Shown: positions 5,710 to 49,753, counted from the stretch's first letter. The stretch is 49,753 nt of DNA from Macrostomum lignano (GCA_002269645.1 NIVC01000133.1:117421-167173), one strand, 5' to 3'. The notes: generated from the letters alone by a model not told the origin. Numbers and translations are program-made.

Positions 5710-5789
5710 CTGGTAGATGGCGGGTGGGTTGGGAGCGCAAGAGGAGACCATGAGTGAGGGGACAGCGGATGTGAAATCGGTGGATAAGG

Positions 5790-13930: not shown

Positions 13931-13967
13931 CTGCGAATGAGGGTGCGGGGATACTGTCAATTTCTAG

Positions 13968-18874: not shown

Positions 18875-20068
18875 TTGAGGTCTAAAACCTCAGTGTTTTA
18901 GAGTCTCATCTCTGATTTTAGGTCCAAAAACTCAGTGTTTTAGAGTCTCATCTCTGATTTTAGGTCTAAAACCTCAGTGTTTTAGAGTCTCATCTCAGAT
19001 TTTAGGTCCAAAACCTCAGTGTATTAGAGTCTCATATCTGATTTTAGGTCCAAAACTTCAGTGTGTTAGAGTCTCATTTCTGATTTTAGGTCTAAAACTT
19101 CAGTGTTTTAGAGTCTCATCTCTGATTTTAGGTCCAAAACCTCAGTGTATTAGAGTCTCATCTCTGATTTTAGGTCTAAAACCTCAGTGTTTTAGAGTCT
19201 CATCTCTGATTTTAGGTCTAAAACCTCAGTGTATTAGAGTCTCATCTCTGATTTTAGGTCTAAAACCTCAGTGTATTAGAGTCTCATCTCTGATTTTAGG
19301 TCTAAAACCTCAGTGTTTTAGAGTCTCATTTCTGATTTTAGGTCTAAAACCTCAGTGTTTTAGAGTCTCATCTCTGATTTTAGGTCCAAAACCTCAGTGT
19401 ATTAGAGTCTCATCTCTGATTTTAGGTCTAAAACCTTAGTGTATTAGAGTCTCATCTCTGATTTTAGGTCCAAAACCTCAGTGTTTTAGAGTCTCATCTC
19501 TTATTTTAGGTCCAAAACCTCAGTGTGTTAGAGTCTCATCTCAGATTTTAGGTCCAAAACCTCAGTGTATTAGAGTCTCATCTCTGATTTTAGGTCCAAA
19601 ACCTCAGTGTGTTAGAGTCTCATCTCAGATTTTAGGTCCAAAACCCCAGTGTTTTAGAGTCTCATTTCTGATTTTAGGTCTAAAACCTCAGTGTTTTAGA
19701 GTCTCATCTCTGATTTTAGGTCTAAAACCTCAGTGTGTTAGAGTCTCATCTCTGATTTTAGGTCCAAAACCTCAGTGCATTAGAGTCTCATCTCAGATTT
19801 TAGGTCCAAAACCTCAGTGTTTTAGAGTCTCATCTCTGATTTTAGGTCTAAAACCTCAGTGTTTTAGAGTCTCATCTTTGATTTTAGGTCCAAAAACTCA
19901 GTGTTTTAGAGTCTCATTTCTGATTTTAGGTCTAAAACCTCAGTGTGTTAGAGTCTCATCTCTGATTTTAGGTCCAAAACCTCAGTGTATTAGAGTCTCA
20001 TCTCAGATTTTAGGTCCAAAACCTCAGTGTATTAGAGTCTCATCTCTGATTTTAGGTCTAAAACCTGT
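18875..20068. repeat. 42-bp minisatellite TTTTAGGTCYAAAACCTCAGTGTDTTAGAGTCTCATCTCTGA, about 28 copies
   Basis: 14-aa period. Confidence 0.97.
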
Positions 20069-20446: not shown

Positions 20447-22182
20447 TTCAATCCGCTGTCTCCTCTATTCAATCAGCTGTCTCCTCTATTCAATCCGCTG
20501 TCTCCTCTATTCAATCCGCTGTCTCCTCTATTCAATCAGCTGTCTCCTCTATTCAATCCGCTGTCTCCTCTATTCAATCAGCTGTCTCCTCTATTCAATC
20601 CGCTGTCTCCTCTATTCAATCAGCTGTCTCCTCTATTCAATCAGCTGTCTCCTCTATTCAATCCGCTGTCTCCTCTATTCAATCAGCTGTCTCCTCTATT
20701 CAATCCGCTGTCTCCTCTATTCAATCCGCTGTCTCCTCTATTCAATCAGCTGTCTCCTCTATTCAATCCGCTGTCTCCTCTATTCAATCCGCTGTCTCCT
20801 CTATTCAATCCACTGTCTCCTCTATTCAATCAGCTGTCTCCTTTATTCAATCAGCTGTCTCCTCTATTCAATCCGCTGTCTCCTCTATTCAATCCGCTGT
20901 CTCCTCTATTCAATCCGCTGTCTCCTCTATTCAATCCGCTGTCTCCTCTATTCAATCCGCTGTCTCCTCTATTCAATCAGCTGTCTCCTTTATTCAATCC
21001 GCTGTCTCCTCTATTCAATCCGCTGTCTCCTCTATTCAATCCGCTGTCTCCTCTATTCAATCAGCTGTCTCCTCTATTCAATCCGCTGTCTCCTCTATTC
21101 AATCCGCTGTCTCCTCTATTCAATCAGCTGTCTCCTTTATTCAATCAGCTGTCTCCTCTATTCAATCTGCTGTCTCCTCTTCTCAATCCGCTGTCTCCTC
21201 TATTCAATCAGCTGTCTCCTCAATTCAATCCGCTGTCTCCTCTATTCAATCCGCTGTCTCCTCTATTCAATCCGCTGTCTCCTCTATTCAATCAGCTGTC
21301 TCCTCTATTCAATCCGCTGTCTCCTCTATTCAATCCGCTGTCTCCTCTATTCAATCAGCTGTCTCCTCAATTCAATCCGCTGTCTCCTCTATTCAATCCG
21401 CTGTCTCCTCTATTCAATCAGCTGTCTCCTTTATTCAATCAGCTGTCTCCTCTATTCAATCCGCTGTCTCCTCTATTCAATCCGCTGTCTCCTCTATTCA
21501 ATCAGCTGTCTCCTCAATTCAATCCACTGTCTCCTCTATTCAATCCGCTGTCTCCTCTATTCAATCAGCTGTCGCCTTTATTCAATCAGCTGTCTCCTCT
21601 ATTCAATCTGCTGTCTCCTCTTCTCAATCCGCTGTCTCCTCTATTCAATCAGCTGTCTCCTCAATTCAATCCGCTGTCTCCTCTATTCAATCCGCTGTCT
21701 CCTCTATTCAATTAGCTGTCTCCTTTATTCAATCAGCTGTCTCCTCTATTCAATCTGCTGTCTCCTCTTCTCAATCCGCTGTCTCCTCTATTCAATCAGC
21801 TGTCTCCTCTATTCAATCCGCTGTCTCCTCTATTCAATCCGCTGTCTCCTCTATTCAATCCGCTGTCTCCTCTATTCAATCAGCTGTCTCCTCTATTCAA
21901 TCCACTGTCTCCTCTATTCAATCCGCTGTCTCCTCTATTCAATCAGCTGTCTCCTCAATTCAATCCGCTGTCTCCTCTATTCAATCCGCTGTCTCCTCTA
22001 TTCAATCAGCTGTCTCCTCTATTCAATCAGCTGTCTCCTCTATTCAATCCGCTGTCTCCTCTTCTCAATCCGCTGTCTCCTCTATTCAATCCGCTGTCTC
22101 CTCTATTCAATCAGCTGTCTCCTCTATTCAATCCGCTGTCTCCTCTTCTCAATCCGCTGTCTCCTCTATTCAATCCGCCGTC
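20447..22182. repeat. 21-bp minisatellite TCAATC(C/A)GCTGTCTCCTCTAT, about 82 copies
   Basis: 7-aa period, no indels apparent. Confidence 0.98.
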
Positions 22183-23254
22183 TCCTTTTTTCTCCCCTCT
22201 TCTTCGAAGATTCTTTTCGATCCGCACTTCTTAACATTTTTCTCACACTTAGTCTCCATTCTATTCTCATCTCAATGCCCTCTCTGCTTCCTATCCGTTC
22301 CACCGATCTAATCTCTCATCTTTGGTCTGACCCTCCTCTGCTGTCTCTTTCTCTCACTCTCCTTCGCCAACTCAATTTACACGTACGTACGTGTATCTGC
22401 CAGTCCCAGGGGACATAGCCAGTGGTTGCGGCTCAAACTGGCCTTATAAATGCTCTTATTGCAGTCATGGGCCACTTGTCTGTCAGTGTAAAAAAACAAA
22501 ACGATTACAGTAAATGTTGTGCTAGATCACAAGCGCTTGGACAGAAACTCGCGCGTTGCAGCAGTGTGGAACGGTCAGGCAAAGCCTGGGTTTTCCAAAT
22601 CGCGGGCTTGCAGCAAGTCAATTGCAATGGAGAAAGAGATGCACGAGATGGATGGGTGCAGTTACTGCAAATATTGACTTGCAGCCTTCCCAGAAAACTG
22701 GGGGGGGGGATTGCCCTGGTTTTTTACACAAAAAGCGCACGGGGAAGAGACTGGATTGCGTTGTTTGGGAGAACTGATCTCAGGAAGATTGACGACAAGA
22801 GTCGGAGGGCCGGCCACTCCGGACGACAGCCAATGCGTTTACTTATTGTTAACTAAATACGTGTTTGAGAGATGGAGAGAGGAGACTCTCTCTCTCAGCA
22901 TTTCTCCTGCAATTTTGGACTCAATATGGTGTCCCCCATTGTCCGTCAGGTTGCTGGGGTTCCTTAACGGAAAGAACTATGAAAATCAGCATTGACTATC
23001 TGTAAGCAAGCCTACCTGCTTAGCTAAAAGAAAATCTCCTTTGCTGGTCATTTCCTGGACTGCATGGCTTGGACCAATGCCAACAAAAGACTGGCTAAGG
23101 TTTCTGAGCTCTCAGTCCGCAATTTTGTTTGCTCAAACTTGGAGGCACGAGTATGGCGTTGGGTAACCCCTGACCTGCTTTGGGGTTAATGCGAATTGTC
23201 AGACACAGACAAAGCACTGTCTGGTTAATCCTTCACTATGCTGTCACTCCTTCT

Positions 23255-24122
23255 CATTCACTCTGTCACCCACCTGTCACTCCCTCCCATTCACCCAATT
23301 CACCCACCTGTCACTCCCTCCCATTCACTCTGTCACCCACCTGTCACTCCCTCCCATTCACTCTGTCACCCACCTGTCACTCCCTCCCATTCACCCAAGT
23401 CACCCATCTGTCACTCTCTGTCATTCACTCTGTCACCCACCTGTCACTCCCTCCCATTCACCCAATTCACCCACCTGTCACTCTCTGTCATTCACTCTGT
23501 CACCCACCTGTCACTCCCTCCCATTCACTCTGTCACCCACCTGTCACTCCCTCCCATTTACCCAAGTCACCCATCTGTCACTCTCTGTCATTCACTCTGT
23601 CACCCACCTGTCACTCCCTCCCATTTACCCAAGTCACCCACCTGTCACTCTCTGTCATTCACTCTGTCACCCACCTGTCACTCCCTCCCATTCACCCAAG
23701 TCACCCACCTGTCACTCTCTCCCATTCACTCAAGTCACCAACCTGTCACTCTCTCCCATTCACTCAAGTCACCCACCTGTCACTCTCTCCCATTCACTCA
23801 AGTCACCCACCTGTCACTCTCTCCCATTCACTCAAGTCACCCACCTGTCACTCTCTCCCATTCACTCAAGTCACCCACCTGTCACTCTCTCCCATTCACT
23901 CTGTCACATACCTGTCACCCTCTCCCATTCACTCAGTCACCCACCTGTCACTCTCTCCCATTCACTCAAGTCACCCACCTGTCACTCTCTCCCATTCACT
24001 CAGTCACCTTACCTGTCACTCTCTCCCATTCACTCAAGTCACCCAGCTGTCACTCTCTCCCATTCACTCAAGTCACCCACCTGTCACTCTCTCCCATTCA
24101 CTCAAGTCACCCACCTGTCACC
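23255..24122. repeat. About 34-bp minisatellite CACCCACCTGTCACTCTCTCCCATTCACTCAAGT, about 25 copies
   Basis: Starts about 35 nt after the exon 3 donor (minus-strand sense). Confidence 0.95.
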
Positions 24123-24157
24123 CTCTCCCTCCACCGCTCCCGTTCCCCCTCTCTCAC

Positions 24158-25741: not shown

Positions 25742-26838
25742 CCGTCCCCAGTCCTTAGTTCGTAGTCCCTAATCCCCAGTCCCTAATCCCCCAGTCCCCA
25801 GTCCCCAGTCCCCAGTCCCCAGTCCCCAGTCCCCAGTCCCCAGTCCCCAGTCCTCAGTCCCCAGTCCCCAGTCCCCAGTCCCAGTCCCCAGTCCCCAGTC
25901 CCCAGTCCCCAGTCCCCAGTCCCCAGTCCCTAATCCCCCAGTCCCCAGTCCCCAGTCCCCAGTCCCCAGTCCCCAGTCCCCAGTCCCCAGTCCCCAGTCC
26001 CTAATCCCCAGTCCCCAGTCCCCAGTCCCCAGTCCCCAGTCCCCAGTCCCCATTCCCCAGTCCCCAGTCCCCAGTCCCCAGTCCCCAGTCCCCAGTCCCC
26101 AGTCCCCAGTCCCCAGTCCCCAGTCCCCAGTCCCCAGTCCCTAATCCCCAGTCCCCAGTCCCCAGTCCCCAGTCCCCAGTCCCCAGTCCCCAGTCCCCAG
26201 TCTCCAGTCCCCAGTCCCCAGTCCCCAGTCCCCAGTCCCCAGTCCCCAGTCCCCAGTCCCCAGTCCCTAATCCCCCAGTCCCCAGTCCCCAGTCCCCAGT
26301 CCCCAGTCCCAGTCCCCAGTCCCTAATCCCCAGTCCCCAGTCCCCAGTCCCCAGTCCCCAGTCCCTAATCCCCCAGTCCCCAGTCCCCAGTCCCACAGTC
26401 CCCAGTCCCCAGTCCCCAGTCCCCAGTCCCCAGTCCCCAGTCCCCAGTCCCCAATCCCTAATCCCCAATCCCCAGTCCTCAGTCCCCAATCCCCAGTCCC
26501 CAATCCCCAGTCCCCAATCCCCAGTCCCCAGTCCCCAGTCCCCAATCCCCAGTCCCCAGTCCCCATTCCCCAGTCCCCAGTCCCCAGTCCCTAATCCCCA
26601 GTCCCCAGTCCCCAATCCCCAATCCCCAATCCCCAGTCCCCAGTCCTCAGTCCCCAGTCCCCAGTCCCCAGTCCCCAATCCCCAGTCCCCAGTCCCCAGT
26701 CTCCAGTCCCCAGTCCCTAATCCCCCAGTCCCCAGTCCCCAATCCCCAATCCCCAGTCCCCAATCCCCAATCCCCAGTCCCCAGTCCCCAATCTCCAATC
26801 CCCAGTCCAATCCCCAGTCCCCAGTCCCCAGTCCCCAG
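25742..26838. repeat. (CCCCAGT)n / (ACTGGGG)n heptamer array, about 155 copies
   Basis: Direct inspection, with CCCCAAT and CCCTAAT variants. Confidence 0.98.
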
Positions 26839-27596
26839 TGCCCAGCCGCAGTTGCAGACATTTAAGCCAGCCAATTTTCTGCTTCAGCTAAAAGCAGGCA
26901 GAAGCGGCTGAGAGGCGGCAGAGTTGAAATTGAGAAGATGGCTCAGCATCGAGAGGCTGAGCCGGTCAGAGAGCTTTGAATGATGCAGCGGCTTAGGCAG
27001 TAAGAAAACCCCACACGCCGACCTGAAGGTGCGGGGAATTGCGGAGCGTGTATTTGAGACAAGTGAGACCCCCCCCCAACCCAGCCTCCGCAATCCTCTC
27101 CATCGTGATCCTATACCCTTGGCTGAGACCTTGGCTTTGAAATTCTACTATATATAACAGTAAATATTGTTAACTTTATATACATTTACAGAGGGAGCGC
27201 TGAGAGGGCCTGGGGGAGTCTGGTGTGTGTGCATGTGTTTTCCCGACAGTGCTTTTAGCCGGCAGCGAGGCACCCACACCAACCCCCCCCCCATCCTAAA
27301 GCCAGCGGTGTCACTGGCGCACTTGAAAGTGCAATTCATTAATGCAAATTGGACGCTTCAATCCTGCAGCCGGCAAACTCTTCTCCGGCCACTGCTAATA
27401 TAGAGGGGGGAGTCTAATTTTGGTAGAAGGCTTCATCTCTGTAGAAGTCGCTCCCGAGGATTTTTCTCCCACAACGCCCCTTCTCTTTCCTCTACCGTCT
27501 CCTGTTCAGCGCTGCAAAGTCTTGACTCATTTGGCCGCCAGCTCCCGGAGAGTCCCGAAAAAAATCCCACCACGCCTATCCCCATCCCCACTTTAC

Positions 27597-32774: not shown

Positions 32775-33757
32775 ATTATCTATGGCTGATCTAAGGCTTA
32801 TCTATGGCTGATCTAGGGCTGATCTATGGCTGATCTATGGCTGATCTATGGCGGATCTATAGCTGATCTATGGCTGATCTATGGCTGATCTATGGCTGAA
32901 CTACGGCTGATCTATGGCTGATCTGATTATTTTCTGGCTACCCTATGAATACAATCTGGCTACTGTATATCGTTACCCTATGGCTATCCTATGACCACTT
33001 TAAGATAATTCCATGGCTAATCTAAGAGATATGTATACTTTACGGCTACTCTATGGCTACTCAACAGCTACTCTATGGCTACTCAACAGCTACTCTATGG
33101 CTACTCAACAGCTACTCTAAGACTACTCAACGCCTACTCTATGGCTACACAACGGCTACTCTATGGCTACTCAATGGCTACTCTATGGCTACTCAATGGC
33201 TACTCTATGACTACTCAACACCTACTCTATGACTACTCAACAGCTACTCTATGACTACTCAACGGCTACTCTATGGCTACTCAACGGCTACTCTATGGCT
33301 ACTCAACGGCTACTCTATGACTACTCAACACCTACTCTATGGCTACTCAACGGCTACTCTATGGCTACTCAACGGCTACTCTATGGCTACTCAACGGCTA
33401 CTCTATGGCTACTCAACGGCTACTCTATGGCTACTCAATGGCTACTCTATGACTACTCAACACCTACTCTATGGCTACTCAACGGCTACTCTATGGCTAC
33501 TCAATGGCTACTCTATGGCTACTCAACGGCTACTCTATGGCTACTCAACGGCTACTCTATGGCTACTCAACGGCTACTCTATGGCTACTCAACGGCTACT
33601 CTATGGCTACTCAATGGCTACTCTATGACTACTCAACACCTACTCTATGGCTACTCAACGGCTACTCTATGGCTACTCAATGGCTACTCTATGGCTACTC
33701 AACGGCTACTCTATGGCTACTCAACGGCTACTCTATGGCTACTCAACGGCTACTCTT
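32775..33757. repeat. 11-bp GCTGATCTATG array (32775-32925) and related 22-bp CTACTCTATGGCTACTCAACGG array (33045-33757, about 32 copies)
   Basis: Direct inspection. Confidence 0.96.
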
Positions 33758-34724
33758 TAGAAACTCTACGTTTGTAGTAGCAAGAGGTTCAACACCGATG
33801 CCATACGCAGAGTTTGTTTGTTTTGGAATGCCGTGAATTGCGGTGCCTAAACTTCCCAGCTCTTCTCCCTCTCTCTCTCTCGCCTTCGACACTCCGACAT
33901 TCTCTCTTCCCCTCTTGCTGCTCTAACAAACGTCAAAACTAATCAGCAGGGTGTCGCATAGAGGGAGACACGAACACAGACGGAATGAAAGACGTAGCAG
34001 AACAAAAAGGCGCACAGTGTGGCAGCGGGTGAGGCCAAACTCAGTGAATAGAGCAGGCGATGAGGCCCAGGAGACTGTATAACAGCACAACATGCCACGC
34101 TTTCACTTTCAGCAGCCAATTACTCAACTAGAATGCAACGCATGTCAACTAATGATCAGAAATCTATAAACATAATCTAGCTTACAGTTCGGCAGCAGGA
34201 ACTCTTGGGGCATTTCTTATCTAATCTAATCTAATTATTAATTAGCGTCTCCGCTTGGTTACCACTGGTCTGGAGTCTTAAAAGAACACGACGCGGTCCT
34301 GGGAGAGGGCTAATGGCTCCCTCGGGTTGCCACTAATAAATCCCCGACATCCTGTCCAGCCGTTTCTTCCCAATGCGGATGTTCAAGAGGGGGATCTCGG
34401 CAGTCTGGTACCGCCCCGGTTACAAAGGCGGACAGCGGAGCAAAAGGTGGGCCAGTCAGGGCGAAAGTTGATGATGAAGAGCCTGATAGATGCGCCGCTT
34501 GCCATTAATTTTGCTCGCTTTGATGGCTCGGTCTGGCTTGTCAGCATCATTAATTGCGAAGGCCAGGAAGAGATAATAGAAACATTGACAGCGCGCATAA
34601 ATACAGGGAATGCTGGGAAAGCAAGAAGTTCTGGCAGACAGCAGAGTGAGAGGCAGACTAACAGACAGATAGACTAGCCGATAAATCAGTAAACTAATAA
34701 ATTCTAGATAAAAAGATAGAAAGA

Positions 34725-35665
<941 letters not shown>

Positions 35666-36191
35666 GGTAGTCCGTAATTGCTGCTGCAGCCGCCCACTCA
35701 GCAGCAGCAATTACAGTAATTTCGCAGCGCCATCAGTCGAAGCAAGATGCGGCCGCGAATCCTCAGAAGCTAAAAAGCGAATGTCGCGCAGCTTTGCTGT
35801 GTGTTCCCATAAAATTAACCCCCCCCCCACTCCCTGTGTTTCAAAGCTTTGCGCAGCTGAGGCGCGGAGACGCCGCCCGAGAGCAGGCCGGGGGCGGCAG
35901 GCAGAACTCCGCTTTGTGTTTTTCTCTCTCTACGAAATTCGCACTCATTTTCGCGTGAAGTTGCCCCGGCCAACAATTCAACTCTTATTGAATGCACTAA
36001 TAAACAGCGTAGACTGGGAAAACAAGGATTAATACCTGCAAAGCCCCCCCACCCACTTCTTATTTGTGGGACTCAAACATTTCAAGTGTCTCCCTCTCTA
36101 AGTATCTGCAGTATTGCGTCAGGCAGAGCCACCCTCACCCCCTCCTGCCCACTTTGCAAACACTTCCAAGCACGCGCGTAATGATGTGAAA

Positions 36192-39852: not shown

Positions 39853-40370
39853 GAACGTTGGAAATTGGCGTCTCTTGAAAATGTATATTCGCATATATAA
39901 CCTACTCTTAGAAAAAGCTTAAAGCATTTTTTTACTTCCGTTGGGCGAATTCGAGCAAAATGATAGTGGGAAAACGAAAATCCCCCTGCTTGACGAACAA
40001 AGGACTTACGAAAAAAGCACTTTCGTAAGCATGCAAGAACTTACGAGAATAGTTTTGCCAAATAATTGATGAACTTATCCCCCAATGTCCTGCCGGGCTG
40101 AATCGTGCTGTGCCTCTTTGATCCCGGGCTCCCTCCTAGCGAAATAAAGTGTCCCTCTGTGTTCCCCTCCCTTCTTTCCCAAATCCTCTTTATTCCCCCG
40201 CAAGCATCCCTTCCTCCGAACCAGTGGCCGAAAAGACTGCAAATGCCCGCGCAAAGATCAAAGGCGCGCAGAAAAGCGAATGCAAAAGTTCGAAGAGGGA
40301 CCCTTCCGCAGTGCTCAGGAGTCTTTATTCCCCCCTATCGCTACTCTTGATCGAATGCTCCGAGGCTCAC

Positions 40371-40466
40371 CTTTGGCAACTGCCGCTGCTCGCTGCTGTC
40401 GTTGACTCGGAATTCATCTGGCAGCGCGGCGGCTGTCGCTGCCGCTGCCGCCGCCGCCGTCGAGGC
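40371..40466 (-). CDS. Poly-Ala exon (ASTAAAAAAATAAALPDEFRVNDSSEQRQLPK); alternative continuation of gene A or part of another gene
   Basis: Strong AAG|gtgagc donor, 96 nt, phase 0-0, compatible with gene A exon 4. The acceptor (ctatcgag) is non-optimal. Confidence 0.42.
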
Positions 40467-41114
40467 CTCGATAGAGAACAGAGCTGAGCAGCCAGTTAGA
40501 AATGCTTTCTGAAATTTGATTTGCCCCAAGTATCGGCTAATTGAATGCACTTTATAAAATCATTTCATGAATTTAAATATCTGCCTCAGTTAAATCTGAG
40601 TGCTGTGTACAGCTTGCAAGCACTCCTAAAGTACAACAGGACGTAAAACTCAGTCGTGTCATTTTTGGAGGCCTATTTCCTGGAAAAAATACACTGCCGA
40701 GATAGGAAAAATCGTTTTTTTCCATCACATAATCAATGATTGCATGATCTGGGGCAGTGAAGATTATAATGGTTTAATAGTAACTGCATGCAACATTTTT
40801 ATTAAAAATATACTTGATTCAAGAAGGAACAAAACAAAGAGTTTAGCTAATGCCACTTGTTAGTATTTACAACTTTGGGCTTATGAATTATGAAAAATAG
40901 TATATTAAAAGATGCCGTGCATGCTAAATTAAGATGGTAGTCTTCATAGCCCTAAATCACATGCAAACATGGTTATATGGTGAAGAGATTATTTCCTATC
41001 TCCGCAGTGTATTTCTTCCAGCAAATTGGCCTCCAAAAATTACATGGTTTTTTAGGTTCGCGACCTGTTTTGCTAAGAGTTAAGTGGTCCTTGACAGCTT
41101 GTCGCAACAGCTTG

Positions 41115-41147
41115 TCACTGTGTGAGTCGCAACTCAGTGTACAACTC
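41115..41147 (-). CDS. Gene A probable terminal exon (ELYTELRLTQ*)
   Basis: aaatacag| acceptor after a 108-nt intron, phase 0, TGA at 41117-41115. Confidence 0.55.
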   Translation of the reverse strand, partial: ELYTELRLTQ

Positions 41148-41255
41148 CTGTATTTGTACAGCAGCTAAGAGCTGCTACCCCATCGCAGTAGGGTACCTTG
41201 ACTTACAAAAACTCGTAGTTATTGCTTTTGAACAAAACTTCATACAATCCTTTAC

Positions 41256-41428
41256 CTCATCTGCACCCTCCTCATCAGAGTCGGGGCCCTCGTCCAGCCG
41301 AGACCCCGGCGGTAAGACGTCGCCGGAACAGACTTCGCTAACGTTTCCATTTCCGTTGCCAGGCAACGAGTTGTCAAGTCGAAATTTACGATGAGCGTGT
41401 TGGGCGCCGCCAACGATAGGACGTTTGT
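41256..41428 (-). CDS. Gene A exon 4: cytoplasmic tail (NKRPIVGG...DEGPDSDEEGADE)
   Basis: ttcatttag| acceptor, GAG|gtaaag donor, 173 nt, phase 1-0. Frame continues from the TM exon and ends in an acidic stretch. Confidence 0.78.
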
Positions 41429-41662
41429 CTAAATGAACAAGTTATATTACAGTTAGTCTTCTATGGTCTAAACTGCTACTTGAGTCTATGGGTCTAGGAG
41501 TCTAATGAGCACATTGGAGCATTTAAAAATCAGGTGGTGGTCAGGGCATTCAAGTGGAACTAAGCTAAAATGAGAATTAATTAGCGCTTTATGCACTAAA
41601 AATTAAGCTTATCTAACAAGCGTACGTGTGAAGTATAATTATACAATGAGGGTATCACTAAC

Positions 41663-41783
41663 TTTTTATGTAACAAGCGGCAAGCGTTAGAATGACGAAT
41701 ACCAAACCAAGAATAATTCCAACAAGCACCGGTGTAAGATAAAATGATGAATCTTGGGGGGCCTGTTCCTTAACCGATTGCCT
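41663..41783 (-). CDS. Gene A exon 3: transmembrane helix (RQSVKEQAPQDSSFYLT-PVLVGIILGLVFVILTLAAC-YIK)
   Basis: ttaatttcag| acceptor, |gttagt donor, 121 nt, phase 0-1. About 20 hydrophobic residues followed by basic residues. Confidence 0.82.
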
Positions 41784-41888
41784 CTGAAATTAAGAAACAG
41801 GCTGTTTCTCTCTGATCACAGACTCATTCATGCATGTATTCTCGTTTTTAAGAAGAGTAGAAGTTTCAACACAGAAATATCGACTTAC

Positions 41889-41990
41889 AGCAAAAATAAA
41901 TAAAGTGTCGCTCAACTTCTTGTAAGAGATGAAGGAGTCTTTCGATGATGTGACTCCGAATTGAAATTTGAAATCAACCTCCAATTGGGT
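41889..41990 (-). CDS. Gene A exon 2 (TQLEVDFKFQFGVTSSKDSFISYKKLSDTLFIFA)
   Basis: aaacaag| acceptor, GCT|gtaagt donor, 102 nt, phase 0-0. Confidence 0.72.
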
Positions 41991-42276
41991 CTTGTTTGAT
42001 GCATAGATTACATTGACTTGTTTCTGAAAATGGTGGTTTTCTATAGTTTGGTATAATTATGTTTTACGTATAGTTTGATAATTCAGTATTAAGTTATAAG
42101 TAAAAAAACTTTACAATTTTAGAGATAAGAGCAGAAAATGTCCAAATTAAGTTTAACAGAAACTTTACTTTGATTTAAAGCGAGGATTGTAATAAGATAA
42201 ACTTTACTGTGAATCGAAACGATTCAAGTCATCTAAATGAGTGAAGGAACTATTCAAGTTGAATATAGCGACTTAC

Positions 42277-42522
42277 CGTGCCGAAAATTAAGACCTTGAT
42301 AAATCTAGGCCTAAAAGACGATGAAAACGAACCATTGCCGTGTTGATATAGTCGTGGGTGCACAAAGCACAAACTTCGGTAGCCCTTTTCAGTAAAAATA
42401 CTTGCCACATCGTTAAGTTGATCGAGGATTGGGTTGTCAAGTGTATTTAAAGTATTGAATGCACTATTACTTTGTGTATCACTAAACAAGGAGAGGCTGA
42501 TGATAAAGAATATGAGGTTCAT
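42277..42522 (-). CDS. Gene A (small type I membrane protein) exon 1: signal peptide and ectodomain start
   Basis: ATG followed by MNLIFFIISLSLFSDTQS. 82 codons ending in a strong ACG|gtaagt donor, phase 0. Confidence 0.78.
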
Positions 42523-43399
42523 AATACATGTTGACTGTTTTACGATTACAAATTCCTGCCGAAATGGAACTCCATATCCGAGTAGGTGAAACTTGAAAGC
42601 ACGATGTTTTAAATTTGTATAAGTGAGTTTTCACATTACCGTTTATAAAAGATATTTCTGTTTTTCAACATTAAAAATTAAATTACTGAATTTTACTGAA
42701 TTTTTACGTTCGGCATTCGTGTTTAGCTTCAGATTTAAAAAAAGGAGCTTTGCTTTGATAAAATTCAATAATATTTCGTATAATATTTTTGACATTGCTT
42801 TCTCGGAAAAACGAAAATATGGCATTCTATGAAACATAACAAGCAAACTGGGTTAGGCTAAAGGTCCTGTTTAATATAATGTCTCTAGGCATTATTTTTT
42901 GCATAAACCAGACAACCATCATTTTACTCATAAAATATTTTTAATCTTAAGAAATACAAGTTGCGCAGTTGAAACTCTAGCTTTTATCCACCAATGAAAT
43001 ATGAAATTAATTAACATTTAAATTAAATGTAAAGATAACCCAGGAAGGTTTACTATTTAATTAATTTCAGTAGAAACAAATATTTCCGAGAATTAGTAAG
43101 TTATAATATTGTTTTGCTAGAATATTATATTAGATTAGAACTAGTTTTAATTCTTTTTTTGTAATGATAGGCTCCTATAAATTCTTAATAGTAAATGTGC
43201 TGTATGTGCATAGTGCATATAATATTTCCTTACAATTAAACTACCTTCCACATATTTATGCATATACATAAATCTGGCATAACTATGGTTTTGTTTGTTA
43301 TATTATTTCTTGTTTCAAATTTGTTCCAGCGCACGTAGAAATGGCTCGTTATATTATTTTAAGTTCAAAAAAGATTACCCACCACCAAAAAAGTTCAAA

Positions 43400-43580
43400 T
43401 TAAAGTTTGAAGTCACAAGAAAGATAATCGGCATTGCAAACACATTTGAGCACCGGCTGGCATCCACACTGCTGTTCATTGGCAAGCAGCCTGTAGGTGG
43501 CCAACCAACGAATACAAGCCAGCATATCTGTTGTCACGGCTGCCAGGTCCCTCATTGTGAGGTCCAGTTGGCACAGCTCT
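43400..43580 (-). pseudogene. Merlin/ISXO2-like transposase N-terminal fragment
   Basis: MRDLAAVTTDMLACIRWLATYRLLANEQQCGCQPV resembles the N-terminal Zn-ribbon region of eukaryotic ISXO2-like transposases (..D...cI.wL....LL.....C.C). Truncated. Confidence 0.45.
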
Positions 43581-43906
43581 GCAGGCGGACGCAAATCGCC
43601 TACCAGAATGATTGTCATAGGAGCTGATAGTCATCCAGCCATTTCTACATGCTTTGCTTTGGTTCATTTTTAGCACAACCAGTGCATTTTATAAAATAGT
43701 TATACATGGTAGACAATCTTAGCTAGTGTTATTTGCTGTTAAAGTATATATGTCTAAACAATAGTGTCAATAGTATTTTTTAAGAATTTGTAGTCTTATA
43801 TAACATAAAGCTAAAGTTTTGCATTTATAAATATATATATTTGTTTAGCTATCTTAAAAGATGTTTCTTTATATAGCAATCAATACTATCAATATTAGTA
43901 AAAAGA

Positions 43907-44880
43907 CTAGCAATCTAGTGCCCCTTTGGGTGCCAAATAAGTAAAGAGCAAAAATTATCATGCAAATCCATTAGAAAAGCACATTTTCTTAAAAACCAGT
44001 TTTTTCTTTGGTTTATAGATCACCTTATATTTGAGTAAAATTTTCATGGACAAAGATGTCTGCTATGAATCTATTGTCTAAAAGTAATAAAAGTACACAA
44101 TAAAATAAAGCCTTTACAAAGATAATAGGCATTCCCCCTAAGTCAAAAGCATTCCCTAGATGGCAAACATTGCAAACCCCCCCCCAAGAGCCTCCCCAAT
44201 TGCAAGCAACCCTAGATAGCAAACATCCCCTAGATAGCAAGCATCCCCCAGATAGCAAGCATCCCCCAGACAACAAGCATTCCCCCAATAGCAAGCAACC
44301 TCAGATAGGAAGTATCTCCCAGATAGCAAGTATCCCCTAGACAGCAAGCATCCCCTAGATAGCAAGCATCCCCCAGATAGCAAGCATCCCCCAGATAGCA
44401 AGCATCCCCTGAATGCAAGCAACCCTAGATAGCAAACATCCCCTAGACAGTAAGCATCCGCCAGATAGCAAGCATCCCCTGATTGCAAGCAACCCCAAAT
44501 AGCAAACATCCCCCAGACAGCAAGCATCGCCCAGATAGCAAGTATCTCCCAATAGTAAGCAAACCCAGATAGCAAGTATCCCTCAGATAGCAAGCATCCC
44601 TAGATAGAAAAAATCCTTGGAGATATTTCTTGGATGGAAAGAAATAGCTAGCAACCGCTTTTCAGATAGAAAGTACCTTCCACACCCAAAGAGCAAGCAT
44701 CTCCTAATAGCAAGTACCTTAGATAGCAAGCATCTTTTTGATAGCAAGCATCCCAGCAATAGCAGGCATCCCTCAAATAGCAAGCATCCCCCAGATAGCA
44801 AGTATCCCCCAGATAGCAAGTATCCCTCAGATAGCAAGCATCCCTCAGATAGCAAGCATCCCCTGATAGCAAGTAGCTAG
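43907..44880 (-). mobile_element. Helitron-like element copy 2 with an expanded GATAGCAAGCATCCCC array (about 44150-44870)
   Basis: Same 3' end (GCACCC-AAA-GGGGC hairpin, then CTAG|T), and homologous to 995-1545. Confidence 0.62.
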
Positions 44881-44884
44881 TTCA

Positions 44885-45300
44885 ACAATATCCTCAGCTT
44901 TATAGTGGCTCCTTTATGTTTGGCATGATGCTTATTTTATATTTGATATGGTGTCTCTTCTATGTTTGAAATGATGGCTTTTTTGTTTGACATGGTGGCC
45001 CATTTATGTTTGGCATGACACTTCTTTTGTTTGAAATAGTGTTTGACATAGTGGCTCTTTTATGTTTGAAATGGTGGCTCTTTTATGTTTGAAATGGTGG
45101 CTCTTTTATGTTTGAAATGGTGGCTCTTTTATGTTTGAAATGGTGGCTCTTTTATGTTTGAAATGGTGGCTCTTTTATGTTGTACATGGTGCCTGTTTTA
45201 TGTTTGAAATGGTGCCACCTACTTTTATGTTTGACATGGTAACTCTTTATGTTTGACATGGGATCTCTTTTATGTTTTACATGGTGCCACTTTGCGTTTG
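44885..45300. repeat. 24-bp TTTATGTTTGAAATGGTGGCTCTT array with a homogeneous core and degenerate edges
   Basis: Direct inspection. Confidence 0.9.
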
Positions 45301-45361
45301 ACAATGCACTTCTTTTTTGTTTATCAAAAAAACTTTTTTTTACCTAAAAAATTTTTGCATT

Positions 45362-45427
45362 ACTGAGATTTGAACCCAGGTTGCTACTTTAGCAGTCCAG
45401 TCTGTTCGCCTCTAGGCTATCTCTTGT
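45362..45427 (-). mobile_element. Degenerate tRNA-like head (SINE remnant or tRNA pseudogene)
   Basis: TAGCCTAGAGG and GGTTCAAATC at tRNA spacing, followed by A/T runs. No intact cloverleaf. Confidence 0.45.
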
Positions 45428-46519
45428 CAATTTGATAACATGACTTATGGCCCTTTTAATTCTATACCTACAGCAAGTCTGTTAGAGTAAAATTTATGAC
45501 ATAATCAATTTCTCAGTCAGCCAGTATCAGTCTCAATTTAAGTTAGCAATATGGTTACGCAATTTCAATCAAGTCAGGCGCTATGTTTCAACACTGTATT
45601 TTTAATACAGCAAGGCAATAAAAGTCAGTAAAACTCAGCCTGTATACAGACAATAAATAAATACAATATGGTTACACAATCTCTATCAAGTCTTGCGTGC
45701 TTTTCTTTGAAACTGTTTTCAACTTGTTGTGATATAATCTTAATCAGAATAGGAATTCAGTCAGTCAGTTTTTTCTCTAGCATTCTTATAATGCATTTCA
45801 AGTTGAAAGAGCTTCTTGACCTTTGCAAAAAAGCATGTTTTTCAAATATTTAATCTCTTTAGGAGTGAGAAATTTCTTAGCCAGGATGCATGTACCGTCA
45901 CAGGGAAATTTCTGATTGAATGGTGCAGGTTTGAAGAAAATTGGTTGAGCCAATTTTTTCTGAAATCAATTGCATACCCATATACAAACAATTCATTTTT
46001 ATAAGGAGAAGGAGAGGAGAAGAAGGAGAAGAAGAAAAAAGAAAATAAGGATGAAATTGCTATGGATCATAAAAAATTTCTCTAAGCAACATTTGTAATA
46101 AAATCCTTTTGACTTAGAAATATTGCCATAGCAGATGAAAATTGGCTTTGGACACTAAAAAGTGCTTTTTCAATCTTCTCCTTTTGGTATATAGTAGCTC
46201 GTAGAAAGAAGGCATTAGAGCAACCTTTTAACATTTTAACTATAAGTTTCAACATGGCTATCATGTGTTTAAGTAAGGCATTATCTGATATAATGTGTTG
46301 CAATTTTGAACTTATTTTTATCAAATCATATATTATTTATTCAATTATAAAAATCGTTCAATTTTTTTTGAGTTATTAGCATTTGTTATTTTAAATTTTT
46401 CGGATATAAATTGAAACAAGAGCATTTCAATAGAAGATATATATGATATGGTATGATATAGACATTTAACTTAAAACATTTTTTCTTATAAGTGACTTCA
46501 AATTTGCATTTCAGAAAAC

Positions 46520-46690
46520 ATGGAACAGCATACAATTAAAATAGTTTATGCAATATTATCTTCACTATTATTAAATATTTCCAATGCATCAAGCTTCTCT
46601 TCTCTTGAGGCATTTGATGAGCGAAGCTTTGATGCTCCATTGGTCAAAACATCTTGGCCATTCATTTTGAATATCCAAAGTCCATACAAG
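46520..46690 (+). CDS. Gene B (small type I membrane protein) coding exon 1: signal peptide MEQHTIKIVYAILSSLLLNISNA...
   Basis: ATG shortly after a gcatttcag acceptor, hydrophobic N-terminus, 57 codons, strong AAG|gtaagt donor, phase 0. It could instead be an internal exon of a longer gene. Confidence 0.68.
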
Positions 46691-47069
46691 GTAAGTATCA
46701 TGGTTTATTTGTTTCTTTAAATAATATTAAACCAGTTATAATAATTGTAACTAATGCTAGAAGTGGTTATAATCCTAGGATTTGATGGTCAGTAAATGGG
46801 TCTCATTCCTATGTACATGTGCTATGTATAAAACTAGCCAATCAGTTTTTACAGACATTGAACCAATGTTGAAATGTACATAGCGGGAGTGGGGTGGCTG
46901 TCGGTTTAACGTCGGTAAAAGCTTATCAGCAAAAATTATATACATTAAGTATTAGGTCATATAATGTCAGCCAAGCAGTCCATTTTTATTTTCCATTCTC
47001 ATAAATATTCTTTAGCTCTTCTTACTTTAATTTCATGCTCCTAATTACTTGTAAACAAAATTTATACAG

Positions 47070-47201
47070 ACCGAGGTAGATTTTGCCGAATCGCCCGACA
47101 ATTCAACTTATGTTGTGCTGGCTAATTTTACCAATTTCGGCGCTAACCGAGGCGCTGTACAATTGCGATTAGTTGGGCCCAGCGAACTGGTCGTTTCTGT
47201 G
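47070..47201 (+). CDS. Gene B exon 2 (TEVDFAESPDNSTYVVLANFTNFGANRGAVQLRLVGPSELVVSV)
   Basis: ttatacag| acceptor, GTG|gtaagt donor, 132 nt, phase 0-0. Two N-glycosylation sequons (NST, NFT). Confidence 0.82.
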
Positions 47202-47288
47202 GTAAGTTTACCGGGCCTCTGTTAAATCTGATTGCTTTTAATTCATAATCATACATGAATTATGATGTTACTGTTAATGTTTTCTTAG

Positions 47289-47484
47289 GCCGAAGTGCAA
47301 GACGAGCCGTCAGACAGTGAGAGCTTCAATCTGACGGCCAACACCCTGCTAGTGTATACAGTAGCCGCTGTTGGCTGCGTATCGCTACTATCCTGCGTTA
47401 TTGCCATTGTGTACCTGTGCGTGGCTAGCGCTCAGGATCCCGAGCCTGTGCCGGCTGATAGCAGCAGCGTGCTCACTGATCCAG
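47289..47484 (+). CDS. Gene B exon 3: transmembrane exon (AEVQDEPSDSESFNLTANT-LLVYTVAAVGCVSLLSCVIAIVYLCV-ASAQDPEP...)
   Basis: ttttcttag| acceptor, G|gtacgg donor, 196 nt, phase 0-1. Long hydrophobic helix and an NLT sequon. Confidence 0.85.
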
Positions 47485-47562
47485 GTACGGACTAACCTAT
47501 GCTTTGTAGGCTTGCGGCTTATTAGATTCTGAGTTACCGTTAATTCTAGTCTCTGGTTGCTT

Positions 47563-48033
47563 GAGAGATATGCGATTCTCTGATTGGTTGCGAGATATGC
47601 GATTCTCTGATTGGTTGCGAGATATGCGATTCTCTGATTGGTTCAGAGATATGCGATTCTCTGATTGGTTCAGAGATATGCAATTCTCTGATTGGTTCAG
47701 AGAAATGCGATTCTCTGATTGGTTGAGAGATATGCGATTCTCTGATTGGTTGCGAGATATGCGATTCTCTGATTGATTGCAAGATATGCGATTCTCTGAT
47801 TGGTTCAGAGACATGCGATTCTCTGATTGGTTCAGAGATATGCGATTCTCTAATTGGTTCAGAGATATGCGATTCTCTGATTTGTTCAGAGATATGCGAT
47901 TCTCTAATTGGTTCAGAGATATGCGATTCTCTAATTGGTTCAGAGATATGCGATTCTCTGATTGGTTCAGAGATATGCGATTCTCTAATTGGTTCAGAGA
48001 TATGCGATTCTCTGATTGGTTCAGAGATATGCG
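47563..48033. repeat. 27-bp minisatellite GAGATATGCGATTCTCTGATTGGTTCA, about 17 copies, in gene B intron 3
   Basis: 9-aa period. Confidence 0.97.
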
Positions 48034-48730
48034 ATCAGGGATGAAAGAAGCATATGGTTCTCTTATTGGATCAGAGGCCTGAAACTGAGAGGATTGATCA
48101 GTGGATAGAGGTGTATTGATGTAGACAGATTTTTTTGACAAACGGCCATAAAGTACGATACTTTATTTATAAATGCTGTCTTGAAGTTAATTTTTTTAAT
48201 AACTCTGTGTAAAATGAGAATATCTAAAATAGGAATACTGCATTGACCGTGTGTATTAAGATTATGATTAATTTCTATTATCATTCGAGGACGAGTCGAT
48301 TAGTATGAGATTTAGCCACAAAATTCATACAGTAAACGCATTGCACACCCCATCTGCAGCAAATGTTGACTTTTTACTCTCTCTCTCCCGTCTGTCTGTG
48401 ATCGCCAGCTGTTCTCCCGATCGTCGCTCCCGTAAGAAGTTTTCTCCCTTCTCTCCCACTCGATTCCTACCTTATTAGGCTAGGGTTGAAAGTAGCAATC
48501 CACAAGGCTTGGCTCCGCGAGATAGCGGGACAGCGTTGAGGGGCGTTCGGGTTGACTAAAAATTGCTTCTGCACTTACGAGAGATCTGGATGAATAATCT
48601 CATATTATCATAGTTCTTTATTACTTGGTTTATTTAAAAATATGTGCCTTTATATGTGAACTTATTTTATAGACTGTTTTATTTTACAGTTTCTACTTTC
48701 CAGATACTGTTTACGCTCGTATTTATTTAG

Positions 48731-48792
48731 CTGTTCTTGGCTTTGAAGTCCATGGTTTGCCATCCGTGTACGCGAATGCCAATGCTGATTAG
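48731..48792 (+). CDS. Gene B probable terminal exon (A-VLGFEVHGLPSVYANANAD*)
   Basis: atttatttag| acceptor, phase 1, open to TAG at 48790-48792. An alternative acceptor near 48413 cannot be excluded. Confidence 0.5.
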
Positions 48793-48836: not shown

Positions 48837-49753
48837 CAGGGGTTGGCAAACTACTTTTTATCTGAAGGGCCAGGTGAAACAGGAATAGAGAGGAAAGTAG
48901 AGAGAATAAAGAGGAGAGAAGAGATGGGATTTAGAAAAAAAGAGAAAAGAGGGATGAGAAGATAAATTATGATAAATCAAAGGAGCGAAGAGATGACAGG
49001 GAAGATACGAGGAGAAAGGAAGGGAGAGGAGAGAAGAGAGGAGGGAAGAGAGAAGAGAGGAGGGAGGAGAGAAGAGAGAGAGAGGGAAGAGAGAAGAGAG
49101 GAGGGAGGAGGAAAGAGAGAATGAAAGAGAGAAGAGAGGAGAAAGAGAGAATGAAAGAGAGAAGAGAGGAGGGAAAAGAGAAGAGAGAATGAAAGAGAGA
49201 AGAGAGGAGGAAAGAGAGAAGAGAGGAGGGAAAAGAGAAGAGAGGAGGAAAGAGAGAATGAAAGAGAGAAGAGAGGAGGGAAGAGAGAAGAGAGGAGGAA
49301 AGAGAGAATGAAAGAAGAGAGAGGAGGGAAGAGAGAAGAGAGAGAAGAGAGAAGAGAGAAGAGAGAGAAGAGAGGAAGAGAGAAGAGAGGAAAAGAGAGA
49401 ATGAAAGAGAGGAGGGAAGAGAGAAGAGAGGAGGAAAGAGAGAATGAAAGAGAGAAGAGACGAGGGAAGAGAGAAGAGAGAATGAAAGAGAGAAGAGAGG
49501 AGGGAAGAGAGAAGAGAGAATGAAAGAGAGAAGAAAGGAGGGAAGAGAGAAGAGAGAATGAAAGAGAGAAGAAAGGAGGGAAGAGAGAAGAGAGGAGAAA
49601 GAGAGAATGAAAGAGAGAAGAGAGGAGGGAAAAGAGAAGAGAGAATGAAAGAGAGAAGAAAGGAGGGAAGAGAGAAGAGAGGAATAAAGAGAGAATGAAA
49701 GAGAGAAGAGAGGAGGGAAGAGAGAAGAGAAGAGAGAAGAGAAGAGGGGGAGA
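48837..49753. mobile_element. Second hAT MITE copy, left end, followed by an expanded AG-rich repeat running off the window
   Basis: CAGGGGTTGGCAAAC...AAGGGCCAG matches the left end of 10968-11211, whose interior also contains a short AG-rich tract. Confidence 0.6.

What the first reader, a model, noticed from the sequence alone, without database searches (positions are those of the whole stretch)
41115..48792. Head-to-head pair of small, apparently paralogous orphan type I membrane receptors
Seen: gene A (minus) and gene B (plus) start about 4 kb apart, facing away from each other. Both have a signal-peptide exon, a short second exon and a TM exon, with intron phases 0,0,1. The second exons begin TQLEVDF and TEVDF. 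The TM exons begin ..VKEQAPQDSSFYLT and ..VQDEPSDSESFNLT. Both ectodomains are only about 100-115 aa and otherwise very divergent. Inference: an inverted duplication followed by rapid divergence, a pattern typical of paired immune, allorecognition or gamete-recognition receptors. I recognise no family for either protein.
Basis: partly seen in the sequence, partly recalled or inferred. Interest (0 to 1): 0.72.

Follow-up and report, generated by a model that had tools for sequence, protein, structure and literature searches.

The report
Two small flatworm membrane-protein genes
Two small single-pass membrane-protein genes face away from each other in the flatworm Macrostomum lignano; one is already catalogued, the other is an unannotated candidate, and no test shows that they share an origin, so the locus looks ordinary.

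Summary
The window comes from the flatworm Macrostomum lignano. Gene A (minus strand) is real and already catalogued: UniProt A0A1I8H0A8 can be rebuilt residue for residue (272/272) from the window, and a 96%-identical second copy exists (A0A1I8JDD4). Gene B (plus strand) has no match in a 5.8-billion-protein collection. It still looks like a gene: GT-AG introns, two perfect GTAAGT donors, G+C-rich exons in A+T-rich DNA and codon periodicity. Its last exon is uncertain.

Both encode small type I membrane proteins and share an exon plan: intron phases 0,0,1, a second exon of 135 versus 132 nt, and a membrane helix starting 17-18 residues into exon 3.

Their sequences are not significantly alike (BLASTP E=16, hhalign E=0.11, ectodomain shuffle p=0.47). 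Only the 17-residue stalk stands out (p about 0.005 before correction). No inverted DNA repeat links the loci, so common ancestry is possible but unproven.

No tested feature marks them as immune or recognition receptors. UniProt's names for A point to collectrin, but current Pfam, a collectrin profile and intron positions did not reproduce that. The AlphaFold model failed (pLDDT 37). Interest is low.

The parts
42277..42522 (-). Gene A exon 1 (coding part): ATG at 42522, signal peptide and first 64 residues of the ectodomain; donor ACG|GTAAGT; phase 0
   Evidence: The exon 1/2 junction is identical in UniProt A0A1I8H0A8, which was rebuilt 272/272 from the window. The 5' leader extends to at least 42594.
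41889..42023 (-). Gene A exon 2, 135 nt, phase 0 to 0 (KQVNVIYASNKTQLEVDF...LFIFA). The A0A1I8H0A8 model uses a later donor at 41820, adding 23 residues and leaving a 36-nt intron.
   Evidence: The donor at 41889 is a perfect GTAAGT and is the one implied by the second copy, A0A1I8JDD4.
41663..41783 (-). Gene A exon 3, 121 nt: polar/acidic stalk, membrane helix (about residues 145-166) and the start of the KNKR stop-transfer; ends in phase 1
41256..41428 (-). Gene A exon 4: cytoplasmic tail ending in the acidic cluster DSDEEGADE
   Evidence: Both UniProt models end exactly at ...GADE.
41115..41147 (-). Gene A terminal piece. The TGA lies at 41115-41117. An acceptor placing the exon start at 41117 puts the stop directly after ...GADE, which fits the UniProt models.
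   Evidence: Which acceptor is used cannot be decided without RNA reads.
42642..42647 (-). TATAAA about 48 nt upstream of the first base of the A0A1I8H0A8 reading frame; candidate core promoter of gene A
   Evidence: This is a motif match only.
46520..46690 (+). Gene B exon 1, 171 nt: ATG, signal-like segment IVYAILSSLLL; donor AAG|GTAAGT; phase 0. An AG acceptor lies 5 nt upstream of the ATG (possible trans-splice site or internal-exon boundary).
   Evidence: The reading frame is closed by a stop 24 nt upstream of the ATG.
47070..47201 (+). Gene B exon 2, 132 nt, phase 0 to 0 (TEVDFAESPDNSTYVV...ELVVSV); G+C 0.49 against 0.30-0.31 in the flanking introns; donor GTG|GTAAGT
47289..47484 (+). 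Gene B exon 3, 196 nt: acidic stalk, NLT sequon, membrane helix (about residues 119-146), acidic start of the tail; donor CAG|GTACGG; ends in phase 1; G+C 0.57
48704..48792 (+). Gene B exon 4 (uncertain): DTVYARIYLAVLGFEVHGLPSVYANANAD, then stop
   Evidence: Alternatives are read-through to a stop at 47493-47495 (...LTDPGTD) or an acceptor at 48690 (...VSTFQILFTLVFI).
47550..48035 (.). Minisatellite of 27 nt x 18 copies inside B's putative intron 3. It produces long spurious open reading frames on both strands.
43905..44873 (.). Copy of a dispersed repeat with an internal 18-nt minisatellite, in the A-B spacer. Positions 43905-44482 align at 76% over 591 nt with window 993-1540.

Best explanation
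The locus holds two neighbouring, divergently transcribed genes for small single-pass type I membrane glycoproteins of Macrostomum lignano.

Shown:
- Gene A is a catalogued gene (UniProt A0A1I8H0A8) with a 96%-identical second copy (A0A1I8JDD4).
- It encodes about 225 residues: a signal peptide, a cysteine-poor ectodomain of about 125 aa with two N-glycosylation sequons, a polar stalk, one membrane helix, a basic KNKR stop-transfer, and a tyrosine-free tail ending in the acidic cluster DSDEEGADE.
- Gene B is an unannotated three- or four-exon candidate with the same layout and exon plan, but an acidic tail and no detectable relative.

Inferred:
- Both are lineage-restricted surface or endomembrane glycoproteins.
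- Neither has a disulfide-bonded binding domain or a signalling motif, and A carries an acidic-cluster sorting-type tail. A therefore more likely acts as a small escort or accessory subunit of a larger membrane protein, broadly in the manner of collectrin, than as a ligand-binding signalling receptor.
- Whether A and B descend from one gene is open.
For: Gene A:
- A0A1I8H0A8 is rebuilt 272/272 from the window.
- Apart from its own second copy, the only hit among 1.84 billion representative proteins is a translated tandem repeat.
- Layout: membrane-spanning stretch within 138-169, sequons NGS63 and NKT92, a single ectodomain cysteine, and KNKRPIVGGAQHAHR after the helix.

Gene B looks coding:
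- All introns are GT-AG.
- Two of only three GTAAGT on the plus strand of 40.5-49 kb are its donors.
- Exons 2 and 3 have G+C 0.49 and 0.57, against 0.30-0.39 in the introns.
- Codon periodicity is present (G1 0.37, G2 0.12).
- Scored with A's codon table, B gets +0.3 bits in frame, -115 and -74 out of frame, and -69 to -152 in intron and spacer controls.

Shared exon plan: phases 0,0,1 and a second exon of 135 versus 132 nt.

No receptor-type domain was found in Pfam.
Against: - The function is inferred from layout only. No expression, localisation or partner data were available.
- B is absent from the protein collection searched, so it has no catalogued protein model. Its tail lacks the basic residues usual after a type I helix, and its last exon is arbitrary.
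- The collectrin analogy rests on source names that my tests did not reproduce.
- The structure prediction for A failed (pLDDT 37.3).
Confidence: 0.5

Rival explanations
1. One reading: A and B are true paralogs made by an old inverted duplication and have since diverged beyond ordinary sequence recognition.
For: - Both have intron phases 0,0,1.
- The second exon is 135 versus 132 nt, and the membrane helix starts 17-18 residues into exon 3 in both.
- The genes are adjacent and divergent.
- Global alignment of the stalks gives p about 0.005 by shuffling.
- Both ectodomains are cysteine-poor.
Against: - BLASTP E=16 and hhalign E=0.11, aligning only the membrane helix.
- Shuffle p=0.47 for the ectodomain, 0.17 for full length and 0.26-0.51 for exon 2.
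- The stalk p-value does not survive about 10 tests well.
- The EVDF motif is not at matching exon positions.
- No inverted DNA repeat links the loci.
- A signal exon, ectodomain exon, membrane-helix exon and tail exon is a common plan for small type I proteins (own knowledge). B's third intron was picked among alternatives.
Confidence: 0.35
2. One reading: the pair are fast-evolving paired immune, allorecognition or gamete-recognition receptors.
For: - Only indirect evidence: both are orphan-like and divergent.
- M. lignano is a hermaphrodite in which reproduction-related genes are reported to evolve fast (own knowledge, not checked here).
- B's uncertain exon 4 holds the tyrosine motifs TVYARI and YLAV.
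Against: - No Ig, lectin, EGF or other binding domain was found.
- The ectodomain has one cysteine in A and none in B, and neither membrane helix has a charged residue.
- A's tail as in the UniProt models has no tyrosine.
- The two catalogued copies of A differ at only 3 aligned positions plus one indel, which does not suggest runaway divergence.
- No polymorphism or expression data were available.
Confidence: 0.1
3. Gene A is a genuine, very divergent member of the collectrin family (TMEM27/CLTRN, and the C-terminal domain of ACE2). It would then escort SLC6-type amino-acid transporters to the cell surface.
For: - UniProt/UniRef names: 'Collectrin domain-containing protein' (A0A1I8JDD4) and 'Si:dkey-194e6.1' (A0A1I8H0A8). 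The latter is the name of a fish gene described as collectrin-like and used as a kidney-cell marker (PMC12997680).
- Size and layout are almost the same as collectrin: about 225 versus 222-226 aa, and the membrane helix starts at residue 144 versus 142.
- Three co-linear short motifs: LSD.TL.F before the stalk, TPV at the start of the helix, and KNK.P after it.
- In both genes an intron lies within a few codons of the KNK motif.
Against: - No PF16959 hit appears at E<=10 for A, P0001 or P0002 in the 2025 Pfam copy, and no Pfam domain is precomputed for them.
- hhalign against a 16-sequence amniote collectrin profile aligns only 12 helix residues (probability 1.3%).
- hmmsearch without filters gives 3.0 bits. 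Among shuffles that keep the segments, 57 of 1000 score as well.
- Intron phases differ: 1,0,2,2,2 in canary CLTRN against 0,0,1 in A. The intron after the helix differs in position and phase.
- No match to ACE2 chains in the PDB.
- Both names may trace to one old automatic signature match (inference).
- My profile held amniotes only, so the test is weak.
Confidence: 0.2
4. Gene B is not a functional gene. It is either a chance chain of open segments or a decaying relic.
For: - No protein with any shared stretch turned up in the 5.8-billion-protein collection, which does hold both M. lignano copies of A.
- The tail has no basic residue after the helix.
- The 3' end is ambiguous, with a 1.2-kb repeat-filled intron.
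- Exon 1 has the same G+C as its surroundings.
Against: - Perfect GTAAGT donors sit exactly at the ends of the open frames of exons 1 and 2.
- The open frames end within 10-30 nt of the proposed splice sites.
- G+C islands coincide with exons 2 and 3.
- There is a strong frame-specific codon signal.
- The signal-peptide and single-helix layout is coherent.
- The collection evidently lacks M. lignano read assemblies: A's clusters hold only UniRef/MetaClust entries. Absence therefore means 'not in the catalogued proteome', not 'not expressed'.
Confidence: 0.25

Closest known systems
Collectrin (TMEM27/CLTRN) and the collectrin-like C-terminal domain of ACE2 (Pfam PF16959)
   Same: - Small type I membrane glycoprotein of nearly the same length and layout: signal peptide, ectodomain of about 125 aa, one helix, a basic KNK stop-transfer and a tail of about 60 aa.
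- Three short co-linear motifs.
- An intron close to the KNK motif.
- UniProt's names for gene A point here.
   Different: - No significant sequence or profile match.
- Different number and phases of introns.
- In the low-confidence model, A's ectodomain looks strand-rich in its second half and lacks the second helix of the collectrin-like domain (weak evidence).
- Collectrin is otherwise known from vertebrates (own knowledge).
- Gene B shows nothing in common beyond the layout.
Taxonomically restricted (orphan) small single-pass membrane proteins, as found in every animal genome
   Same: - No relatives outside the species in very large searches.
- Short, cysteine-poor, glycosylated ectodomain.
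- Simple exon plan.
- Local gene pair.
   Different: This is a descriptive class, not a family. It predicts no mechanism.
Paired immune-type or allorecognition receptors (for example vertebrate paired Ig-like receptors, or invertebrate allorecognition loci)
   Same: Adjacent, divergent, dissimilar genes for type I membrane proteins.
   Different: - No Ig or other binding domain and no cysteine pair.
- No charged residue in the helix.
- No ITIM or ITAM in A's catalogued tail.
- No demonstrable paralogy.

Membership tests
Collectrin family (PF16959) | Match to the Pfam Collectrin model above its cut-off | tested here: not met
   hmmscan at E<=10 lists no PF16959 hit for A, B, P0001 or P0002. No Pfam domain is precomputed for P0001 or P0002. 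All 120 listed true collectrins carry PF16959.
Collectrin family (PF16959) | Profile-level similarity across the ectodomain to bona fide collectrins | tested here: not met
   hhalign against a 16-sequence amniote profile gave probability 1.3% for A (helix only) and 0.1% for B. hmmsearch --max gave 3.0 bits for A and -0.8 for B; segment-preserving shuffles reached these scores 57/1000 and 396/1000 times. The profile held amniotes only, so sensitivity was limited.
Collectrin family (PF16959) | Layout: signal peptide, ectodomain of about 125 aa, one helix, basic stop-transfer, tail of about 60 aa, about 222 aa in total | tested here: met
   Gene A has about 225 aa, a helix from about residue 144, KNKR after it and a 59-aa tail. 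Canary collectrin has 224 aa, a helix from about 142 and KKKNKEP after it. B (195 aa) fits only loosely and has no basic stop-transfer.
Collectrin family (PF16959) | Fold of the collectrin-like domain, as in ACE2 residues about 616-726 | tested here: inconclusive
   The AlphaFold2 model of P0001 has mean pLDDT 37.3 and pTM 0.22, too poor for a fold search. No homologs exist to deepen the alignment.
Collectrin family (PF16959) | Shared intron positions and phases with vertebrate CLTRN | tested here: not met
   Canary CLTRN has 6 exons with phases 1,0,2,2,2. A has phases 0,0,1, plus a phase-0 last junction. The intron after the helix lies in the K codon before KNKEP (phase 2), against the N codon of KNKRP in A (phase 1). 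Intron loss and gain over this distance make this a weak test.
Collectrin family (PF16959) | Association with SLC6 amino-acid transporters and support of their surface expression | not testable with these tools
   This needs co-expression and transport assays.
A-B paralog pair (inverted duplication) | Sequence similarity above chance | tested here: not met
   BLASTP E=16. hhalign E=0.11. Shuffle p=0.47 for the ectodomain and 0.17 for full length. Only the stalk reaches p about 0.005, uncorrected.
A-B paralog pair (inverted duplication) | Same exon-intron plan | tested here: met
   Both have phases 0,0,1, a second exon of 135 versus 132 nt, and a helix at the same offset in exon 3. The third intron of B is not secure, and the plan is not specific.
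A-B paralog pair (inverted duplication) | Same ectodomain fold | not testable with these tools
A's model is unusable.
Paired immune or recognition receptors | Recognisable binding domain (Ig-like, lectin, EGF and the like) with conserved cysteines | tested here: not met
   No Pfam domain was found. The ectodomain has one cysteine in A and none in B.
Paired immune or recognition receptors | Signalling features: ITIM or ITAM in the tail, or a charged residue in the helix for adaptor pairing | tested here: not met
   A's catalogued tail has no tyrosine. Neither helix has a charged residue. B has tyrosine motifs only in its uncertain exon 4.

The most novel reading that the evidence does not exclude
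A and B are an old inverted-duplicate pair of Macrostomum-specific surface glycoproteins that diverged under diversifying selection. They would act as a paired recognition system, for example sperm-egg or partner recognition in this outcrossing hermaphrodite. Gene B would be a functional gene missed by the current annotation.
Probability: 0.1. Interest if true: 0.55.

Novelty: new member of a known kind. Interest (0 to 1): 0.2.

Why it matters
It matters little as it stands.
- Gene A is already in the M. lignano proteome.
- Gene B, if transcribed, would be one more gene missed by annotation in a repeat-rich genome.

Two points could give it modest value:
- If A proved to be a true collectrin relative, the collectrin domain would predate vertebrates. 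That would bear on the origin of the ACE2 C-terminal half and on transporter escort proteins in invertebrate excretory or gut cells.
- If A and B proved to be paralogs, they would be a compact example of divergence beyond sequence recognition with a preserved exon plan.

Neither point is supported yet.

Tried and rejected
- **First model of B.** It ended exon 3 at 47485, a non-GT donor, and gave phases 0,0,2. I rejected and corrected it. Earlier searches used that sequence, which differs only by five extra residues (GFYFP) at the exon 3/4 junction.
- **Spliced A as a query.** I used the catalogued P0001 instead. I did not try to pass spliced B to the structure tool, which states the same rule.
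- **P0003.** This was the only non-self hit of the exhaustive search (E=3.5e-5). It is a translated tandem repeat and was rejected as spurious.
- **Genomic or transcript contigs.** Look-ups for P0001 and P0002 found nothing on record. The second locus, and hence dN/dS, could not be examined.
- **Fold search.** Not run, because the only model was of too low confidence.
- **Weak Pfam hits.** DUF3078, DUF4064, CD34_antigen, PetG, Cadherin_C_2 and HRG were all below their cut-offs and lay on helix or stalk segments, so I rejected them.
- **Other copies in the window.** A tblastn search found none.
- **RNA genes.** Rfam and tRNA scans found none.
- **Literature.** A search for collectrin in flatworms found nothing.
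- **A collectrin-guided AlphaFold run of A.** I considered it and rejected it as circular.
- **Human collectrin query.** It was validated by its match to the ACE2 C-terminal domain (E=2e-41) and by retrieving named collectrins at 90-96% identity. The profile was built from the retrieved sequences, not from the typed one.

Full report
**Source and setting**

The window is eukaryotic, A+T-rich between genes and crowded with minisatellites (54 Tandem Repeats Finder rows). It has no tRNA genes and no Rfam families. The protein of gene A matches two UniProt entries of the flatworm Macrostomum lignano. One of them, A0A1I8H0A8, can be rebuilt 272/272 from window exons 42277-42594, 41820-42023, 41663-41783 and 41256-41428. 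The window is therefore that gene's locus.

**Gene A (minus strand)**

The coding exons are 42277-42522, 41889-42023, 41663-41783 and 41256-41428, with intron phases 0,0,1. A last junction leads to the TGA at 41115-41117.
- Both UniProt models end at ...GADE. This fits a last exon that starts at 41117, so that the stop follows directly.
- A0A1I8H0A8 uses a later donor for exon 2 (41820), adding 23 residues. The second copy, A0A1I8JDD4 (96% identical), implies the GTAAGT donor at 41889.

The protein has about 225 residues:
- a signal-like N-terminus;
- an ectodomain of about 125 residues with two sequons and a single cysteine;
- a polar stalk;
- one membrane helix;
- KNKR after the helix;
- a tyrosine-free tail ending in DSDEEGADE.

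**Gene B (plus strand)**

My first model used a non-GT donor. The corrected canonical model is 46520-46690, 47070-47201, 47289-47484 and 48704-48792. Its phases are 0,0,1 and it encodes 195 residues.

Evidence that B is coding:
- Two of only three GTAAGT on the plus strand between 40.5 and 49 kb are its first two donors.
- The open frames close within 10-30 nt of the proposed splice sites.
- Exons 2 and 3 are G+C islands (0.49 and 0.57, against 0.30-0.39 in the introns).
- G is enriched at codon position 1 (0.37) and depleted at position 2 (0.12).
- Scored with A's codon table, B gets +0.3 bits in frame, -115 and -74 out of frame, and -69 to -152 for intron and spacer controls.

Evidence against:
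- No protein in a 5.8-billion-sequence collection shares anything with B, although both copies of A are there.
- The tail after the helix is acidic, with no basic anchor.
- The last exon is one of several options across a 1.2-kb intron filled by a 27-nt minisatellite.
- One caveat weakens the first point. A's clusters hold only UniRef and MetaClust entries. The collection therefore lacks M. lignano read assemblies, and absence means only 'not in the catalogued proteome'.

I rate B a real gene at about 0.7.

**Are A and B related?**

They share an exon plan: phases 0,0,1, a second exon of 135 versus 132 nt, and a helix starting 17-18 residues into exon 3. They are adjacent and divergent, with ATGs 3,998 bp apart.

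Sequence tests do not support homology:
- BLASTP gives E=16.
- hhalign gives E=0.11, over helix residues only.
- Shuffle p-values are 0.47 for the ectodomains, 0.17 for full length and 0.26-0.51 for exon 2.
- tblastn cross-hits have E=16-68.
- Only the 17-residue stalk reaches p about 0.005 in global alignment, before correction for about ten tests.
- No inverted DNA repeat links the loci.

Common ancestry is possible (I put it near 0.35) but not shown. A fold comparison was not possible. A's AlphaFold model failed (pLDDT 37.3) for lack of homologs. The spliced B protein may not be submitted, under the rule shown.

**Is there a family?**

Apart from its own second copy, an exhaustive phmmer search of 1.84 billion representatives with A's catalogued copy found only a translated tandem repeat. 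Pfam and the PDB give nothing for either protein.

UniProt calls the two copies 'Collectrin domain-containing protein' and 'Si:dkey-194e6.1'. The latter is the name of a fish gene described as collectrin-like and used as a kidney-cell marker (PMC12997680). I tested this lead as follows.
It retrieved 301 collectrins, and all 120 listed carry PF16959.
- A 16-sequence amniote profile aligns only 12 helix residues of A (hhalign probability 1.3%) and nothing of B.
- Unfiltered hmmsearch gives A 3.0 bits. Shuffles that preserve the signal, ectodomain, helix and tail segments reach that score in 57 of 1000 cases. For B the figure is 396 of 1000.
- The canary collectrin gene has six exons with phases 1,0,2,2,2. 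Its intron after the helix is near A's but not at the same position or phase.

What remains is an almost identical size and layout, plus three short co-linear motifs (LSD.TL.F, TPV, KNK.P). Membership is therefore not established. I put it near 0.2, and the amniote-only profile limits the test.

**Receptor interpretation**

Nothing tested marks these as immune or recognition receptors.
- They have no binding-type domain.
- Neither ectodomain has a cysteine pair.
- Neither helix has a charged residue.
- A's catalogued tail has no tyrosine.
- The two catalogued copies of A differ at three aligned residues and one indel.

A shared bidirectional promoter is unlikely.
- The spacer holds two minisatellites and a copy of a dispersed repeat also present at 993-1540.
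- It also holds a G+C island with a domain-less open reading frame on the minus strand.
- Each gene has a TATAAA near its own start, at 42647-42642 and at 46405-46410. These are motif matches only.

**Most likely mechanism (inferred)**

A is a small glycosylated single-pass protein. It has a short, disulfide-free ectodomain, a basic stop-transfer and an acidic-cluster tail. This suits a trafficking or escort subunit of a larger membrane protein better than a signalling receptor. B, if expressed, is a similar but independently diverged or unrelated neighbour.

**Verdict**

One gene is already catalogued. Paralogy and the receptor reading are unsupported. The locus is ordinary, and interest is low (0.2).

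Noticed in passing
window 8780-8952 (-) and 13800-13970 (-): Two open-frame pieces carry TNFR/NGFR cysteine-rich motifs (PF00020). The second scores 29.9 bits against a cut-off of 29.4 (E=7.5e-7). The first scores 19 bits and starts with a signal-peptide-like MPVSKELLLLLLLSLTITVS. Each abuts a minisatellite. They may be one or two TNF-receptor-like genes.
   Followed up: partly
whole window; arrays include 2319-3110, 5782-6416, 8128-8731, 11693-12408, 16872-18248, 18874-20066, 20447-22186, 23241-24129, 25744-26845, 33042-33756, 34714-35666, 49024-49746: Minisatellite density is extreme (54 Tandem Repeats Finder rows). The arrays generate most of the long open reading frames in the six-frame list, which are therefore artefacts.
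   Followed up: partly
window 993-1540 and 43905-44482: A dispersed repeat has about 250-290 nt of unique sequence followed by the same 18-nt minisatellite (AAGCATCCCCCAGATAGC). The two copies are 76% identical over 591 nt. One copy lies in the spacer between genes A and B.
   Followed up: partly
window 40657-40709 and 40992-41044: A 53-nt inverted repeat, 91% complementary with 282 nt between the arms, lies just 3' of gene A. It looks like a miniature inverted-repeat element.
   Followed up: no
window 43400-43630 (-): A G+C island in the spacer holds an open frame, MTIILVGDLRPPAELCQLDLTMRDLAAVTTDMLACIRWLATYRLLANEQQCGCQPVLKCV. It has no Pfam hit and may be a relic of a mobile element.
   Followed up: partly
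window 45360-45425: A stretch resembles part of a tRNA on the minus strand (GGTTCAAATCTC...). Neither ARAGORN nor Rfam calls it. It may be a tRNA-derived repeat fragment.
   Followed up: partly
window 42523-42594 (-): Gene A's 5' leader holds two short upstream ATG frames. One starts at 42574 (9 codons). The other starts at 42529 (15 codons) and overlaps the main ATG. Several AG acceptors lie in the leader, so spliced-leader trans-splicing could remove these frames (read).
   Followed up: no
window 40100-40500: A G+C-rich island (0.53-0.65) downstream of gene A has open frames on both strands, including an alanine-rich minus-strand frame. It has no Pfam hit and may be an exon of the next gene.
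   Followed up: partly
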